In this document: positions 20,227 to 62,406 of the stretch, in pieces
Position numbering within the stretch: the stretch's first letter is position 1
Layout of the letters: each line of letters starts with the position of its first letter
NCBI GenBank assembly: GCA_964106645.2
Contig: OZ067040.1
DNA length: 64,000 bases
Source of the DNA: Podarcis pityusensis
Lineage: Eukaryota
Reading direction: 5' to 3' (one strand)
The notes under the pieces: model-generated
What the model was told of the DNA's origin: nothing
Databases searched by the model: none
Seen by the model: the letters and a program-made list of their open reading frames with translations, nothing else
Position numbers and translations under genes: made by a program

Positions 20227-21115
20227 AAAACAGGGACACTGTCAGAATAATAGAATACAGCAAAATGCACTCTGTGTACCACTGGGGGAAGTAGCTATTT
20301 GCTGTAAAAGTAAGAGGCAGAAGAAGAATCATAGATTCTTCTGTCTTTCATTTTGCAAGTCAAGAGGAAATGACAAAAAGTAAAAGCAAATGAAGATGGA
20401 TGAAACGCCAAAAGGGTGAAGGGGATTCTCCTGTACAGGGATCAAGAATTGACTCCTGGGTCACTTCAGCTGTTACTGCTCTTTGTGGTGTGTGTTTTTC
20501 AAAAGGCATTTCCAGAGGGCCACTTCCTGATGGTAGCTGAGGCAAAGACCTTTAAAACTTTGTCTATAGGTCATTCAGAGGTCATTGTAAATTGAACTCA
20601 ATATCTTTGATAGGAGGGAAGCAGAAAGCTCTAGGGAACAAACCTAGTTTACATATCATGTTATATTTGTAAAATTAGTTGGGTTCATTAAAGCCAAAAT
20701 GCCCTTACCAGGTAATGGAGGACATGTCTTCAACTTACAGCTGGGAAAGATAATTGGTACACTTCAGACCAATTAGCAATGAAGGAAGCTCAGTTAAAAT
20801 CTAGTTTTCTGCAGGTTGTAATAGAATAAAATCGATAAAATTATTCTGTACATGGTTTACAAAAAAGGGAAAATGTCATCATTGGAGGAAAATAATTGTC
20901 TTTGAGAGAGAAAGAACAAACTGGTGTTTAATGAGCAAGCTCTGCCTCATATACCAAAAATTTCAAAACACAGAAACATATCTATATTTCACGCCAGCAC
21001 TCTAAACATACTTACTATGAAGCAGATCACACGCTTCCATAATATATACATCCATTCAGTTAATCTTAAATTGAATTAAAATACTAGTGTAAATATATAC
21101 AGAATACAATTAGTT

Positions 21116-21340
21116 TGAATCTGGACTGCTCTCTGCCCCAGCCTCTTCCTGCTCACTAAATCCTGTTGCCTCTTCAGCTTCTGACACCTCCTCTTCCCAG
21201 TCTGTCCAGTCTTCTCCCTCTGACCACTCATTATCACCTCAACACAAATCCCCTGGCTCTGAGACACCTTCACCTGGGGATTCCCTTGGGGGCTGCCCAG
21301 CTGGTGCCCCCCCCCCACCACATCCAGCCAATCCATGACA
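21116..21340 (-). mobile_element. LTR-like repeat fragment
   Basis: Minus strand begins TGTCATGGATTGGCTGGATG and is purine-rich; resembles a dispersed lizard repeat by pattern recognition only; other end not found. Confidence 0.35.
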
Positions 21341-21541
21341 GCTACAGGAGAAAGGAGGGCATTTGCAAAAATTGCTTGCCCTTCCTCCTTTTGCTAGAAA
21401 CAAATATAGAATTGTTCTTGCTAGAAAGAGATTATAAACTATGATACCTTCTGCGTGGTCTGTCAAGTGGATTAAAAAAAAAAAAGTCCCTTAATTTTCC
21501 ACAGTACCTTGAATTTAGGTACAATAACTTGATTTCAATTA

Positions 21542-21787
21542 GTAGGGGCATGGCTTGCGTGCGAGGGCTACTGCGCTGCCAGCGTTGCTGCCACTGCTGA
21601 TGCTAGGCGTCAAAAGGGGCCACCAGAGCAAGTCCGGTCAGGTGGGTGGGCAGGCGGGCAGAGGAGATGGCGAACGAGGGCAGTGGCGCCAGGGCCGGTT
21701 TCCAGATAGCCACGAGTCTGGCAGAGGTAGCGAGCTTGATGGGTACTTCAGAGCAGGCGCTGTGCCTCATCCTGTCCATTTTCATGG
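21542..21787 (+). pseudogene. LPCAT3: tailless retroposed fragment of LPCAT3 (MBOAT5) 5' UTR plus first 40 codons
   Basis: ATG 21667 (GAGATGG) reads MANEGSGARAGFQIATSLAEVASLMGTSEQALCLILSIFMG, similar to recalled human LPCAT3 SLNKLATSLGASEQALRLIISIFLG; GC-rich with 14 CpG in AT-rich flanks; perfect 11-bp TSD GATTTCAATTA at 21531-21541 and 21788-21798. Confidence 0.82.
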
Positions 21788-22339
21788 GATTTCAATTAAT
21801 AACTATGAGGCCCATATTTCTAATATTGCATAATACCAATGACGGACTGGTTTGTGTTACTGAGGGCAGGGGTGGGGAGATGAAAAACTAGAGATACTGT
21901 CCTGACTAAAAATAAGGGGTTTTTTTTTATTAAAAAAACAACAACCAAGAAACATTTGGTATCAACTGGAGGCTGGTTTAGGGGTTATTGTCCAGAAGGA
22001 CACAATACGTGTGATTGTTTTCTCTCCGGAAGCCATGCCCAGGTGGTGAAAGTTAAGTATTGTTGCTCAGATAAGGTCTGAAAGCAGTTTTCCTGGATGT
22101 CTTCCTTGCCCTTCTGTCAAATGGTCTCTATGAATGCAAAGCTGTGGACAGACATAGTCCAGACCTATTGACAACTTTTGGAGGTGGAGCAGTGAGGATT
22201 TTGAGCCTGCATTTTGGATACGACACTACTTCATATTTCTGACTAGAAATCTAAACTAGAGATGCAGAGATCACAAGAGACAAGTGGTTTGAATTAGGAA
22301 ATTGCCTTTGCATCTGTAATACTGAGAGCATCCTAGCTG

Positions 22340-22488
22340 CAGTGCTTTTTTCTAAAAAAAAAAAATGTTTAGGGGTACTCTAATTTTCCTACTCCTATTG
22401 AAATACTGCCCCTCAATGAGGCCAAACTTAGATTCACAAAATGTTTAGGGGTATGCGTACCCCTGCGTACCCCCAGAAAAAAGCACTG
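22340..22488. mobile_element. hAT-type MITE (family B, copy 2, inverted relative to copy 1)
   Basis: TIRs CAGTGCTTTTTTCT / AGAAAAAAGCACTG; perfect 8-bp TSD CCTAGCTG. Confidence 0.9.
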
Positions 22489-22767
22489 CCTAGCTGTATG
22501 TGAAAGGGTATTATCCTAGAATGGTTTCTTTAAATGTTAACTTTTATGTTTGCTGCTGAAGCAACGTGTATGGGGAAACAACTGCACACAGCAAGCCTCT
22601 TTAAAAGATAGGGGGGACCTTGTTTATATATCTTTGGCTTTATATATCTTTATATATCTTTATCAACAACAATTTACATGTACTGCTCATAAGCTGTGAA
22701 TAAATCTGCATTGAAAAATATTATAGAACTTTTTAAAATCATGCCTTCTACCTTTCAGTCTACTAGC

Positions 22768-30417: not shown

Positions 30418-30542
30418 GTATAGATGTGTTACTGAGGAACTGCTCTGAGTTAAGTTAGTCGGACTTACCCTACAGATTAATTTATTTTATTTCTGTATAT
30501 AATCATTCTGTCTTATGAAGCAGTCAACAGTATAGATATAAG

Positions 30543-30886
30543 CAGCGGCGTAGCTAGCCATTCAGGCACCCAGGGTGGCTCGTTGGCATTGTGCTGGAGA
30601 GAGCCATCCATGGGGGTGAGGCAAGCTGCCCACTGGGCAGGTCAAGCCGGGGCAGGGCTCACTGTGTGGAACCTGTAGGGTGGCTGAAGGGGAGGTGGTG
30701 GGCAGAAGCAAGCCCCACGCTGCCGTTTCGGGCAGTGCAGAGCCTTCAGGCACCCAAGCCACTGTGTCACTTCCAGGTAAGACATGGCTCGGGTGTGTTG
30801 CAGGCCCCACAGTAAGTGCCGCCCCCCCATGGTGTGGCGTCCAGTGCTCCCTGCCCTGCCCCTCCCACCCCCTAGGTACGCCTCTG
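30543..30886. mobile_element. GC-rich hAT-like non-autonomous element
   Basis: TIRs CAGCGGCGTAGCTAG / CTAGGTACGCCTCTG; TSD not clean. Confidence 0.65.
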
Positions 30887-31173
30887 ATATATGGACATAT
30901 GTCAGCTCATTGTTTACTTTAAAGCCTTCATACTGGATGGAGAGGCAGGGTTGAAATAGAAAAATAACAGTTAAATTCTTTGGACGTGACATGGCTTTGC
31001 CCTAAACATTCTTATAGCAGCACTCCAGCTCTTCAGGGGAAAGTGCCTTACCTTCTTTGTCCTCACTCCAAAGTTGTTTGAGTAAAGTGGAAAGCTGCAG
31101 GCTCATCACTGCAGTCCAAACACCTCACCTTACCTGAGGTGGCTGGTCTGACGAGGCCAGTATCTTTTTTAAG

Positions 31174-57036: not shown

Positions 57037-57286
57037 ATATATTCTGGTGGTGAACTTCTCCACTTCATTGATGGATTTAATGAGGAAAAGAGCAATTGGA
57101 TGCGTTATGTAAACCCAGCACATTCTGTTCAGGAGCAGAACCTGGCTGCTTGTCAGAATGGAATGGATGTCTACTTTTATACTATCAAACCCATACCACC
57201 TGGCCAGGAATTGCTTGTGTGGTATTGCCGGGACTTTGCGGAAAGGTTACACTATCCTTCCACTGGAGACCTGGTGATGAATATAA
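57037..57286 (+). CDS. PRDM1: Blimp-1 exon 4 (PR domain C-terminal half)
   Basis: [42 protein letters not shown]...[17 protein letters not shown]; CTGCAG| and A|GTAAGT; 250 nt. Confidence 0.97.
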
Positions 57287-58670
57287 GTAAGTAGATTACA
57301 GCAGACTTGCATGCAAATAATGTCTTTTGCCAATGGGGTGTGTGTCTAAAATATGCATTATACCTACACACAAAATTTATCATGAAGTTTGCTATAATTT
57401 AGGGCCTTGACACGAGAAGATAGTAGCTTTCACCCCGCTGCAAATTGAAGGCTGCAAATTGGGGGCCTCTACCTGGATCATGACCACAGGGATGACACCC
57501 TCCTGGTAACTAGAGTAGGTCACCCAGCACACTCATGGTGGTTCTAGATCATGGCCAAACACTTCAGCAGAATTTGTTGTGAACGTAATTTGTTTCTAAA
57601 TGGGTCATGAATGATGTAACGATAAACATCATCTCCATTCTTAGCTTGTCTGGAAATTCTTTTACCTCAGAACTTCTAGGTTCTCATTCATCTCACAAAA
57701 CAGATGCCTTATTTAGAACAAAAATGTGAATCAGCATTATTAAAATCCTCTACTCAAAATGTTCAGCAGCATTTACTCAAGAAATTACTCTGCACGCCCA
57801 CAGCTATTTTTCAAGGTCTCAGGGGAAAGAATTAGAATTAAATCTCTCAGGCAACTATTAGGAGGGCCACAAAAGAAAGGTTCTTTAAACTAGATCTGGG
57901 CAGAAAACGATTCACTGTACATTTGTCATTTATGTTGTTTCACTGAGCACTAAGTGGCTATACTGGTAAAAATGCTCCTCAGATTGGGTGTAACTTGTGA
58001 TGAAGATATGCTAACCTTACAGTTGATCTGTATGTATTAAGACAAGGAACAGCATTTTTTTGGGCATAGAGTGAAAACTCGTAGAAACCATGGCTTAAAT
58101 TTAGTTTATGAATGTGAAATGGGGGAAGCAGGTGCTTTTTGTAGGCGAGGATATAGGCTTAATAGGGATTTTTGCACAAATGACACTGAACATAAAGCAT
58201 ATTGTGAAGGGACCACAAAAGACTCACTTCAGTACTTCACTGCATGTAGCGTGAACATACTGGACCAGTATGTGAACCAGCAGAAACGTGCTCTGGTTCT
58301 TGTAACTTATCTAGGAGTGTTGTGTTTCTCTCTGATATTTACCTTGGGGTGTGTGTGTGTGTAAACCACCACAAATGACAATTTTAACTTCTTGCCTTTC
58401 TGACAAGACTTTGCTAGAAGGCTGATAGGAGCATGGCAGACTGTCTGTCTAATAGCTCCACATCTATCACTCCATTCTTCTGCTATGCATGTACGCATAC
58501 ACACATCACTTTTCATCTGTTCCTCTGAATTTTTTTTCTAAGTTGCTGGCTTAATGAAGAGCTAGCTGATCAAAAGCAAAAAAATAATAAAAAATAGGAA
58601 GATAACTCTCTCTCTCCCCCCCCCCCCCCAATGCCTCTAGGAAAATGTGGAACTAGCAAACTCTAGACCA

Positions 58671-59315: not shown

Positions 59316-59796
59316 CCTCTTGTGTGTCTCATCCATAGTTCTGTTATTCATGCATGATTGCAAGGCACTCAGTCACCTTTTAAAGTGACGAGTGTTGAAA
59401 CTTGTTTGTTTTCGTTAGAAGCAGTTGAAGGAGCTGGAACAGCCAAATCCTTTTGCCTTGGAAAGGTATATAGTAAGCTGCCTTGTTATCTACAAAGTAT
59501 GCATCAGGTGCTACTGTGTTTTCTGTAATCAGTTTAATCCAATAATATACAAGAAAGGTGAGACTAGAACAAATGTAGCAGAAATGAACTGACTGGATCA
59601 TGATAATCACCCAGGATTTAATAAGTAGCTACTGAGTTTATTTCTGTTGAGTATAATGCTGTGCTATTCCTTCCACCAATGCAAATACCTAGGAATGACT
59701 ATTTATATGTGTGTTTTAAGGCAGAGGCTAATGACCAATGTCTGTAAATTGTCTTTATTGGCCTTAAAAATTCATTGCCTTGTTTTTATATTTCAG

Positions 59797-60842
59797 CACA
59801 AAGCCATGTTAATCCAAAGCAGCCAGCTAATGACAAAGATGAACTTTATCTAAAAACTGTTCCCAGAAGAGAGCACAGTGTGAGGGAAATCCTGAAAACT
59901 GATTCCAGTAATCCCAAAGGAAAGGAATTATTTTATAGCCACATTTATCCACATACTCAAGAAAAAGACTTGGAGGGCTTGAGAAAAAATTGTAGTCCTG
60001 AAAAGCCTTTCTATCCTCGTATTGTCTACCCAATCCGACCGCCCATCCCTGAAGATTACCTGAAGGCTTATAGGATTGAGAGGCCAAGTTACATTGCCCA
60101 CTCACCTATCCAGTCTTCTACCACACCAAGCCCCTCAGCAAGAAGTAGTCCAGACCAAAGTTTGAAAAGCTCAAGCCCTCACAGCAGCCCAGTTACAGTC
60201 TCACCCCTAGCTTCTATGACTCAAGAGCACAGAGAACCTTATCCTTACTTGAATGGACTCTATAACTCAGAAGGATTAGGGGCATATTCTGGGTATGCAC
60301 CTTCAAGCCATCTCCCGCAAGCCTTTCCCTACCACAAATTTTTGTTACCACCATATGGCATGAGCATCAACAATTTCAACCTCTTTCCAAGGATGTATCC
60401 TTTCTACAGCAGCCTACTCAGTGGAGGAAGCATCCCCAATCATATGCTGAACTCCTCTCCAGGACTTCCAAGTTCCTTGCCATCTGATGGAAGCCGACAG
60501 CTGCTGCAACCTGACCATCCAAGGGACTTCCTCATCCCTGCACATAACAGTGCCTTCTCTATCACAGGGGCAGCTGCCAGTATGAAAGACAAGCCATGTA
60601 GCCCAACTAGTGGATCGCCCACAGCGGGCACAGCAGCCACTTCAGAACACATAATGCAACCTAAACCTACCTCAGCAGTGTTGGCTGCCACCAGCAATGA
60701 AGAAGCCATGAATCTTATCAAGAACAAGCGAAACATGACTGGTTACAAAACCCTCCCATACCCACTGAAGAAACAGAATGGGAAAATAAAGTATGAATGC
60801 AATGTCTGCTCCAAAACCTTTGGTCAGCTCTCTAATTTGAAG
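59797..60842 (+). CDS. PRDM1: Blimp-1 exon 5 (Pro/Ser-rich region, start of ZF1)
   Basis: ...[26 protein letters not shown]...[34 protein letters not shown]; TTTCAG| and AAG|GTAGGC; 1046 nt, phase 1-0. Confidence 0.98.
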
Positions 60843-61465
60843 GTAGGCCTTTGAAGGAAAATATCATTTCTAGACCTCATGGATAAACAAACAAAACCCC
60901 AAACCAATCTGGTTACTGTCTCTCTGGAAAGTCTTTCTTAAGCACCTGTTTCTTCTAGGCTTTAATCACCTATGTTGGTTTTAGTATAGTATCTTGATAT
61001 TGTGGTAATAACTTTTGAGGTTTAATAAACCTTTGGGGTTTAATTACCTTTTGACATTTTCAAAGGATAACTCCCTGCAACAATTGAGCAAGTTGATTTT
61101 AGCATGTAGTGGACATAATCTTTTCATTCTCATTCCTTGTGGGGCTTTTGTTCTGATAACTGCTAAGTGAGAGCATCCATGGAATAGCCAGATTTAATTT
61201 GTGTTCTTCATTGGATCATCAATAAGTGCAAAATGGCCCTAGAAACTTGGAGAACAGTTCCAATGCTGCATTTTTAAAAAACATACTTTTTAGGGAGCCT
61301 TTTTTAAAGCCTATCCAAGTTAACTGTATATTGTGCAACTTTGGGCAAAAGTAATAAAAGCAACAGTGCCTGGTATTTTAGATACTCAATAAGTAGATTA
61401 GGATATTTAACACACTATCTTGGAAGCTATTACGAAAGTATAATAAATGTTCTGTTTCTTAAAAG

Positions 61466-61830: not shown

Positions 61831-62406
61831 GTCTGCCACAAGCGATTCAGCAGCACAAGCAACCTGAAGACCCACCTGCGGCTACATTCTGGAGAGAAGC
61901 CTTACCAGTGCAAGCTTTGCACTGCTAAATTTACCCAGTTTGTGCACTTGAAACTGCACAAACGGCTCCACACCAGAGAGCGCCCGCACAAGTGTATCCA
62001 TTGCCACAAGAGCTATATCCACCTTTGCAGCCTCAAGGTCCACCTGAAAGGCAACTGCCCTGTTGTCCCTGAACCCACCCTTTCGACAGAGGACCTCAAC
62101 CGGATCAATGAAGAGATTGAGAAATTTGACATTAGTGACAGTGCAGACAGGCTGGACGATGTTGAGGACAACATTGACATGGCATCTATAGTAGAAAAAG
62201 AAATACTTGCTGTGCTTAAACGAGAGATGGAAGGAACTACTCTTAAAGCATCGCTGCAGAGGAACCTGGGAAATGGGCTGGTTTCCTCAGGATGTAACCT
62301 TTATGAATCATCAGATATGTCAGTTGTGAAGTTGCCTCAAGGTCATCCACTACCTCGGGTACCTATAAAGGTCAAGCAAGAAGCAGTTGAACCAATGGAC
62401 CCTTAA
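61831..62406 (+). CDS. PRDM1: Blimp-1 exon 7 coding part (ZF3-5, acidic C-terminus, IKVKQE SUMO motif, stop)
   Basis: VCHKRFSSTSNLKTHLRLHSGEKPYQC...VKQEAVEPMDP*; ATCAG|; TAA at 62404-62406; total CDS 2304 nt = 767 aa. Confidence 0.98.
   Translation, partial: VCHKRFSSTSNLKTHLRLHSGEKPYQCKLCTAKFTQFVHLKLHKRLHTRERPHKCIHCHKSYIHLCSLKVHLKGNCPVVPEPTLSTEDLNRINEEIEKFDISDSADRLDDVEDNIDMASIVEKEILAVLKREMEGTTLKASLQRNLGNGLVSSGCNLYESSDMSVVKLPQGHPLPRVPIKVKQEAVEPMDP

What the first reader, a model, noticed from the sequence alone, without database searches (positions are those of the whole stretch)
21531..21798. Exon-1-only, tailless LPCAT3 retrocopy with perfect TSD: possible retrotransposition of a splicing intermediate
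Seen: a 246-bp GC/CpG-rich insert between two perfect GATTTCAATTA repeats, with no poly(A) or LINE tail. It holds ~125 nt of leader, a strong-context ATG and 40 codons plus one G (…TCC ATT TTC ATG G). Recalled: the peptide matches the LPCAT3/MBOAT5 N-terminus (SEQALRLIISIFLG; R>C here fits CpG decay), and human exon 1 ends in phase 1 within that Gly codon. Ordinary retrocopies keep the 3' end and lose the 5' end; this is the reverse. Inference, two models: (a) LINE machinery copied the free 5' exon released after splicing step 1; (b) the nicked target primed inside the mRNA, because target GATTTCAATT could resemble an exon 2 start encoding G-Y-P-F (e.g. GATATCCATT). Either route would move promoter-proximal CpG-island sequence into the PRDM1 regulatory domain.
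Basis: partly seen in the sequence, partly recalled or inferred. Interest (0 to 1): 0.82.

Follow-up and report, generated by a model that had tools for sequence, protein, structure and literature searches.

The report
Tailless LPCAT3 first-exon retrocopy
[quoted passage not shown] It is real and shared by three related species, and most likely belongs to the known class of 3'-truncated "tailless" retrocopies rather than being a copied splicing intermediate.

Summary
GATTTCAATTA occurs twice in the window, at 21531-41 and 21788-98. The two copies bracket a GC-rich block (GC 0.63, CpG o/e 0.60) in AT-rich DNA (GC 0.39, CpG o/e 0.22). There is no A-run before the second repeat.

An outgroup letter at 21542 suggests the duplication was originally 14 bp, GATTTCAATTAATA.

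The 40-codon frame best matches the N-terminus of chicken LPCAT3 among solved structures: E 0.15, or E 0.0033 when the repeat-encoded residues are included.

It is not a misassembly. Single contigs from an independent sample of the same species and from two related species (1.5% and 4.1% diverged) span both repeats. No empty site was seen.

A second genomic locus, presumably the parent gene, matches only up to 21788. An LPCAT3 contig from a distant species matches up to 21790. This fits an end at an exon 1 donor, with exon 2 starting G-A-T (Gly-Tyr).

The repeat therefore starts with letters that look like the start of exon 2. That favours internal priming on spliced mRNA, a described mechanism, over a free 5' exon. 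I could not retrieve the parent's exon 2 sequence, so the free-exon model stays open at about 0.2.

The parts
21529..21531 (.). Inferred first-strand nick site in the empty target, top strand ...ACTT|GATTTC...
   Evidence: Direct reading. The TT before the nick fits the L1-type TT|AAAA and tailless TT|WAAAAWW motifs. The letters after the nick do not fit (motifs from PMC5322556).
21531..21544 (.). Target-site duplication, left copy: GATTTCAATTA exact, then GTA against ATA in the right copy
   Evidence: Organism C has A at 21542 and G at 21540, so the ancestral copy was probably the 14-bp GATTTCAATTAATA.
21545..21666 (+). Leader of the insert, presumed LPCAT3 5' UTR. It is GC-rich and holds a short upstream ATG frame (21550-21600) and in-frame stops before the main ATG.
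   Evidence: No second-locus contig matched this part at 80% or better, so its origin in LPCAT3 exon 1 is inferred, not shown.
21667..21787 (+). ATG plus 40 codons plus one G: the N-terminal coding part of LPCAT3, ending where exon 1 is expected to end
   Evidence: Translation. Chicken LPCAT3 7f3x residues 40-64/66 match at E 0.15 and 0.0033, and 7ewt at E 0.041. Second-locus contigs in X2 and X6 lie on about 21685/21688-21788, and the organism F contig lies on 21751-21790.
21763..21763 (+). T in the window (TGC, Cys). It is C (CGC, Arg) in organism B's copy, in the second-locus contigs and in organism F.
   Evidence: table 3.
21788..21801 (.). Target-site duplication, right copy: GATTTCAATTAATA. 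Its first letters GAT TT read in frame as Gly-Phe, where LPCAT3 has Gly-Tyr.

Best explanation
This is a decaying, 3'-truncated, poly(A)-less ('tailless') retrocopy of the 5' end of LPCAT3 mRNA. A LINE enzyme inserted it by target-primed reverse transcription before organisms A, B and C diverged.

Proposed steps:
1. The enzyme nicked the bottom strand at ...ACTT|GATTTCAATTAATA.
2. The freed 3' end, which is the complement of GATTT..., annealed inside the spliced mRNA to the first bases of exon 2 (G-A-U, the Gly-Tyr codons) instead of to a poly(A) tail.
3. Reverse transcription ran from there to the 5' end of the mRNA.
4. A staggered second nick produced the 14-bp duplication.

Shown here: the insert, the duplication, the absence of a tail, the LPCAT3-like frame, the presence in three species, and the end of similarity to a second locus at 21788.

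Inferred: the RNA intermediate, which enzyme acted, the annealing at exon 2, and that 21545 is the transcription start.

The insert has no sign of function.
For: - Structure: searches show an exact flanking repeat that coincides with a sharp GC/CpG step, and no A-run before the second repeat.
- Identity: searches give LPCAT3 as the top two of 177,635 PDB sequences, and the match ends at ...SILMGY. In one search the organism F contig continues upstream with letters that I translated by hand as ...SLGSS before EQALRL, close to chicken ...ALGSS-EQALRL.
- RNA origin: the second-locus DNA contigs of A and C stop matching at 21788 (from_end 26 at 21763, plus bin-depth arithmetic). That is expected if an intron (G-T...) follows there. 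The organism F contig matches through 21790 (G-A-T), as spliced sequence would.
- Microhomology: adding the repeat-encoded residues raises the LPCAT3 score from 15.7 to 20.9 bits, with MGF aligned to MGY.
- Precedent: tailless retropseudogenes are 3'-truncated and TSD-flanked, and their target is complementary to the terminal 2-18 nt of the copied RNA. They derive from mRNAs among other RNAs and were found in therian mammals and the green anole (PMC5322556). Notes by other first-stage readers report Sauria SINEs and L2 in this genome (unchecked).
Against: - The parent gene's exon 2 could not be read. The secured microhomology is only G (second base of Gly) and T (first base of Tyr), plus an A inferred from one distant-species contig.
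- Under internal priming it is a coincidence of roughly 1 in 500 to 1 in 2000 that annealing began exactly at the first base of exon 2.
- The target lacks the A-rich WAAAA motif typical of tailless insertions.
- X20 is only guessed to be RNA. It also holds an intergenic conserved element at similar depth, so it may be DNA.
- The leader 21545-21684 has no detected counterpart at the second locus.
Confidence: 0.5

Rival explanations
1. Free 5' exon template, the reader's model (a). After the first step of splicing, the released exon 1 (capped, with a 3'-OH at the donor) was used directly as the template for target-primed reverse transcription. That would explain why the copy ends exactly at the donor and has no tail.
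For: - The end of the insert coincides with where the second-locus DNA contigs stop matching (21788). It also coincides with the position where chicken LPCAT3 continues with Gly-Tyr.
- The exact coincidence with an exon end is expected under this model and is a rare accident under internal priming.
- There is a precedent for first exons entering LINE-mediated insertions with ends exactly at splice donors. Of 17 mRNA/LINE-1 chimeras in primates, six ended precisely at splice donors, some without any acceptor on the LINE side (bioRxiv 10.1101/2025.02.02.635956).
Against: - No stand-alone case has been described, and my literature searches found none.
- Free 5' exons are short-lived and held in the spliceosome (general knowledge).
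- The duplication begins G-A-T, like the start of exon 2. Under this model that is a chance match of 1/16 to 1/64.
- For small RNAs, Noll et al. found no truncated RNA species that could serve as templates, and they favoured internal priming.
Confidence: 0.2
2. A longer, ordinary retrocopy (exon 1, exon 2 and onward, poly(A)) was inserted first. It later lost everything from exon 2 to the tail by a deletion between the similar short sequences at the start of exon 2 and at the right-hand duplication.
For: It relies on the same G-A-T similarity as internal priming. The final sequence would be indistinguishable.
Against: It needs two events. The deletion would have to restore an exact copy of the duplication, yet the right repeat copy is identical in A, B and C. 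No remnant of other exons or of an A-run lies beside the insert.
Confidence: 0.07
3. DNA-level event. A fragment of the LPCAT3 promoter and exon 1 genomic DNA was captured at a staggered break, or copied in by template switching during repair, with no RNA step.
For: There is no tail, and no exon-exon junction inside the insert has been shown. The leader has no proven match to a transcript.
Against: Similarity to the second genomic locus ends at 21788, exactly at the insert's end, rather than running into intron sequence. The insert starts about 120 nt before the ATG, a length plausible for a 5' UTR. A 14-bp duplication is typical of LINE nicking.
Confidence: 0.04
4. The resemblance to LPCAT3 is fortuitous, and the block comes from another GC-rich gene or an unknown repeat.
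For: The PDB E-values are weak (0.15 and 0.0033). Pfam, Rfam, the 1.84-billion-protein scan, the word-indexed search and the Atlas all gave nothing.
Against: Both top PDB hits are LPCAT3, at the expected N-terminal position and ending at the same residue. The organism F contig that shares the last 40 nt continues upstream with letters that translate to a sequence like chicken LPCAT3. The blank searches are explained by the 40-aa query length and by the tools' length windows.
Confidence: 0.05

Closest known systems
Tailless retropseudogenes (Schmitz et al. 2004; Noll et al. 2015, PMC5322556)
   Same: It is copied from a cellular RNA, 3'-truncated, without an oligo(A) tail, with a complete or nearly complete 5' end, and flanked by a target-site duplication. 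TT stands before the nick. The start of the duplication resembles the RNA just beyond the copied part. The class has been reported in a lizard as well as in therian mammals.
   Different: The source is a spliced mRNA rather than a small RNA. The target is not A-rich after the nick (GATTTC instead of WAAAAWW). The truncation point coincides with an exon-exon junction. The complementarity is only partly documented.
Classical processed pseudogenes / mRNA retrocopies
   Same: LINE-type duplication of 7-20 bp, an mRNA source, and decay after insertion (CpG to TpG at 21763).
   Different: Classical copies keep the 3' end and poly(A) tail and lose the 5' end. This one keeps only the first roughly 245 nt, has no tail, and shows no internal exon junction that could be demonstrated here.
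First-exon / LINE-1 chimeric insertions ending at splice donors (bioRxiv 10.1101/2025.02.02.635956)
   Same: The first exon of a gene, in sense orientation, ends at its splice donor and lies inside a TSD-flanked retrotransposition product.
   Different: In those cases the exon is fused to a nearly full-length LINE-1 carrying a poly(A) tail, and trans-splicing was proposed. Here nothing lies between the exon end and the duplication.

Membership tests
Tailless retropseudogene | Derived from a cellular RNA | tested here: met
   The frame matches the N-terminus of LPCAT3. A second genomic locus and an organism F LPCAT3 contig share its last 40-100 nt. The strength is moderate, with a best E of 0.0033.
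Tailless retropseudogene | No oligo(A) at the 3' end | tested here: met
   The insert reads ...TTTTCATGG directly followed by the repeat.
Tailless retropseudogene | Flanking target-site duplication | tested here: met
   11 exact letters, or 13 of 14. Organism C supports a 14-bp ancestral form.
Tailless retropseudogene | 3'-truncated relative to the source RNA | tested here: met
   Only 40 codons are present, while the chicken LPCAT3 chains in the PDB are 448-501 residues long.
Tailless retropseudogene | Target complementary to 2-18 nt of the RNA at the truncation point | tested here: inconclusive
   The duplication starts GAT TT and LPCAT3 continues with Gly-Tyr (GGN TAY), and the score rises by 5 bits. 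The organism F contig matches through GAT. The parent's exon 2 nucleotides were not obtainable.
Tailless retropseudogene | Target motif TT/WAAAAWW | tested here: not met
   The site is ACTT|GATTTCA. Only the TT fits.
Classical processed pseudogene | Poly(A) tail and retained 3' end | tested here: not met
Free-5'-exon retrocopy (hypothetical) | 3' end exactly at the exon 1 donor of the parent gene | tested here: inconclusive
   Second-locus DNA contigs stop matching at 21788 in two species, and a likely spliced contig runs on to 21790. The parent's intron sequence was not seen.
Free-5'-exon retrocopy (hypothetical) | No more than chance similarity between the duplication and the start of exon 2 | tested here: inconclusive
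   There is a G-A-T / Gly-Tyr resemblance. A three-letter match has a chance of 1/64.

The most novel reading that the evidence does not exclude
The insert is a direct reverse transcript of the free 5' exon released after the first catalytic step of splicing. It would be a stand-alone counterpart of the first-exon/LINE-1 chimeras that end at splice donors. It would show that spliceosomal intermediates are accessible to LINE reverse transcriptases in the germ line.
Probability: 0.2. Interest if true: 0.8.

Novelty: new member of a known kind. Interest (0 to 1): 0.38.

Why it matters
If internal priming is right, this is one more tailless retrocopy. It is useful mainly as a clean mRNA-derived example outside mammals, and as a presence marker shared by three related species.

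Its one unusual feature is an end exactly at a first-exon donor. That makes it a good test case. Reading 14 bases of the parent's exon 2 and running a genome-wide census of such ends would tell whether splicing intermediates are ever reverse-transcribed into the germ line.

There is no evidence that it alters PRDM1 regulation.

Tried and rejected
**Attempts to retrieve the parent LPCAT3 (all failed):**
- The search for homologous proteins with the 40-aa peptide and with the 81-aa ORF returned no candidates. Its length window excludes full-length LPCAT3.
- The search of protein representatives with 40 aa returned 0 hits.
- The ESM Atlas gave no usable hit.
- Pfam gave nothing on the 44-aa frame.
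- Rfam gave nothing relevant on 21000-22600.

These blanks say nothing against the LPCAT3 identity.

**Other checks:**
- No empty site was found. Organisms B and C both carry the insert.
- Misassembly is rejected by the spanning contigs in X2, X3 and X6.
- The Bov-B/RTE 'Tn-TA' insertion signature (PMC13295347) was compared with the site. The T-run lies 15-17 nt upstream rather than about 10, and the duplication starts with G. There is no clear fit, so the responsible LINE clade is left open.
- No tRNA-like SINE heads were found in the window.
- No LINE protein domains were found in the long ORFs tested.

- I did not scan metagenome or prokaryote collections for LPCAT3 patterns. They would not hold this animal, and a degenerate pattern could fetch human contigs.

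Full report
**1. What is in the sequence**

Direct reading shows GATTTCAATTA at 21531-21541 and again at 21788-21798. A 246-bp block lies between the two copies.
- The 11-mer occurs nowhere else in the 64 kb, against 0.14 expected from dinucleotide-preserving shuffles.
- Exact 11-mers 100-1000 bp apart are not rare in themselves: my script found 51 such pairs in the window. This pair has by far the largest inner-minus-outer GC contrast, +0.26.
- The block has GC 0.63 and CpG o/e 0.60. The window as a whole has 0.395 and 0.22.
- The block ends ...TTTTCATGG directly against the second repeat. There is no A-run and no LINE tail.
- The repeat finder extends the repeat to 14 nt with one mismatch, GATTTCAATTA-GTA against -ATA.
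- In organism C the mismatched position 21542 is A, the same as the right-hand copy. The more economical reading is therefore an original 14-bp duplication GATTTCAATTAATA and an insert of 243 bp (21545-21787).

**2. Identity of the insert**

The frame from the ATG at 21667 has 40 codons plus one G. It is preceded by in-frame stops and a short upstream ATG frame.

Against all PDB sequences the best hit is chicken LPCAT3:
- 7f3x matches query residues 16-40 to chain residues 40-64, at E 0.15.
- Reading on through the repeat adds GFQL. The score then rises from 15.7 to 20.9 bits (E 0.0033), with ...SIFMGF aligned to ...SILMGY.
- The second hit is another LPCAT3 entry, 7ewt, at E 0.041.

A 97-nt contig of distant organism F shares 21751-21790 with the insert. 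It continues upstream with letters that I translated by hand as ...SLGSS before EQALRL, close to chicken ...ALGSS-EQALRL.

All other searches were blank. That is expected for a 40-aa query and for tools that only look at proteins of similar length. I put the LPCAT3 identity at about 0.9-0.95.

**3. Reality and age of the insert**

Contigs from public runs were laid on 20800-22600.

| Run | Organism | Contig span | Differences from window |
|---|---|---|---|
| X2 | A, independent sample | 21209-22365 (1154 nt) | 6 |
| X3 | B | 21206-22216 | 15 (1.5%) |
| X6 | C | 21199-22386 | 49 (4.1%) |

- All three contigs contain the insert and both repeat copies. The insert is therefore no misassembly, and it predates the split of these species. 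No empty site was seen.
- Between A and C the insert carries at least 13 differences in 246 nt, against 4.1% for the whole contig. It is therefore not conserved more than its flanks.
- Position 21763 is T (Cys) in the window.
- Position 21673 A (Asn3) is private to the assembled individual. All other runs have G (Asp).

**4. The 3' end**

Besides the locus itself, X2 and X6 each hold one further contig that lies on the insert.
- From the bin depths, and from the value from_end = 26 at 21763, that contig covers about 21688-21788 in A and 21685-21788 in C (my arithmetic).
- I take it to be the parent gene.
- In both species, similarity stops one base after the insert. That is expected if the parent continues with an intron (G-T...) at this point.
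- The organism F contig runs two bases further, to 21790 (G-A-T), as spliced sequence encoding Gly-Tyr would.
- The tool only guesses that X20 is RNA. X20 also contains an intergenic conserved element at similar depth, so this point is suggestive only.
- Taken together, the end of the insert is consistent with the exon 1 donor. I could not read the parent's intron or exon 2.

**5. Mechanism**

The 14-bp duplication and the TT before the nick point to a LINE endonuclease and target-primed reverse transcription. Two routes give a tail-less, exon-1-only copy.

(b) Internal priming.
- The nicked target, the complement of GATTT..., anneals inside the spliced mRNA at the first bases of exon 2.
- This is the described route for tailless retropseudogenes. 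They are 3'-truncated and TSD-flanked, and their target is complementary to the terminal 2-18 nt of the copied RNA.
- They derive from mRNAs among other RNAs, and occur in therian mammals and the green anole (PMC5322556).
- Other first-stage readers' unchecked notes on Sauria SINEs and L2, together with the chicken-like LPCAT3 frame, suggest a squamate genome.

(a) A free 5' exon as the template.

Weighing the two:
- Under (a) the exact end at the donor is expected, but the G-A-T match between the duplication and exon 2 is a 1/16 to 1/64 accident.
- Under (b) the match is expected, but annealing exactly at the first base of exon 2 is a 1/500 to 1/2000 accident.
- The likelihood ratio of about 10-30 for (a) is offset by a much lower prior. 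No stand-alone case is described.
- That prior is raised a little by primate mRNA/LINE-1 chimeras in which first exons end exactly at splice donors, sometimes with no acceptor on the LINE side (bioRxiv 10.1101/2025.02.02.635956).
- My estimates are (b) about 0.5, (a) about 0.2, and the remainder on a later deletion, DNA capture, or wrong identity.
- If the parent's exon 2 matches the duplication at 7-8 of 10 positions, (a) is effectively refuted.

**6. Context**

PRDM1 lies on the + strand.
- 57100-57291 matches the PRDM1 PR domain at E 1.9e-32.
- The last exon, with zinc fingers and the C-terminus, is at 61942-62406.
- The insert lies about 35 kb upstream of the PR-domain exon and 9 kb upstream of a GC-rich block at 30.5-30.95 kb.
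- Nothing indicates that the insert acts on PRDM1.

**7. Unexplained**

- The leader and first six codons (21545-21684) have no second-locus match at 80% or better in X2 or X6. Possible causes are a contig break in a GC-rich promoter, an indel, or an extra exon junction near GGCAG|TGGC.
- The second-locus contig in X6 has four times the locus depth.
- The T/C pattern at 21763 does not follow the A-B-C divergence order. Parallel CpG decay or lineage sorting could explain it.

**8. Verdict**

The insert is old enough to be shared by three species and is decaying. It is best filed as a new member of the known tailless-retropseudogene kind.

Noticed in passing
window 21105-21320 and 22325-22507: Two very high-copy repeats flank the locus. 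Summed contig depth reaches 10^4 to 10^6 in three species, against 10-90 for unique DNA. The right one follows an A-run and contains TGTTTAGGGGTA twice. Neither was classified, and no tRNA-like head was found.
   Followed up: partly
window 22002-22279: A 989-nt contig of distant organism F matches this stretch at about 88% (34 differences in 278), while its flanks do not match. It looks like a conserved non-coding element about 200 bp to the right of the insert, upstream of PRDM1.
   Followed up: no
window 30500-30950: This is the most GC-rich block of the window (GC 0.63-0.65). It may be the PRDM1 promoter or first-exon CpG island.
   Followed up: no
window 57100-57291, 59775-60854, 61942-62406: PRDM1 coding exons on the + strand: the PR domain (E 1.9e-32 to PDB PRDM1), a long Pro/Ser-rich exon running into the first zinc finger, and the last exon with zinc fingers and the C-terminus.
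   Followed up: partly
window 21673 and 21763: 21673 A (Asn3) is private to the assembled individual, while another individual and two related species have G (Asp). 21763 T is shared by the A and C copies but not by B, against the divergence order. This suggests recurrent CpG decay or lineage sorting.
   Followed up: no
window 21472-21486 and 21920-21945: An A13 run lies 45 bp left of the insert, and a T9/A7 run lies 120 bp to its right. They form an imperfect inverted pair, and the second has modestly raised depth. They are not part of the insert.
   Followed up: no
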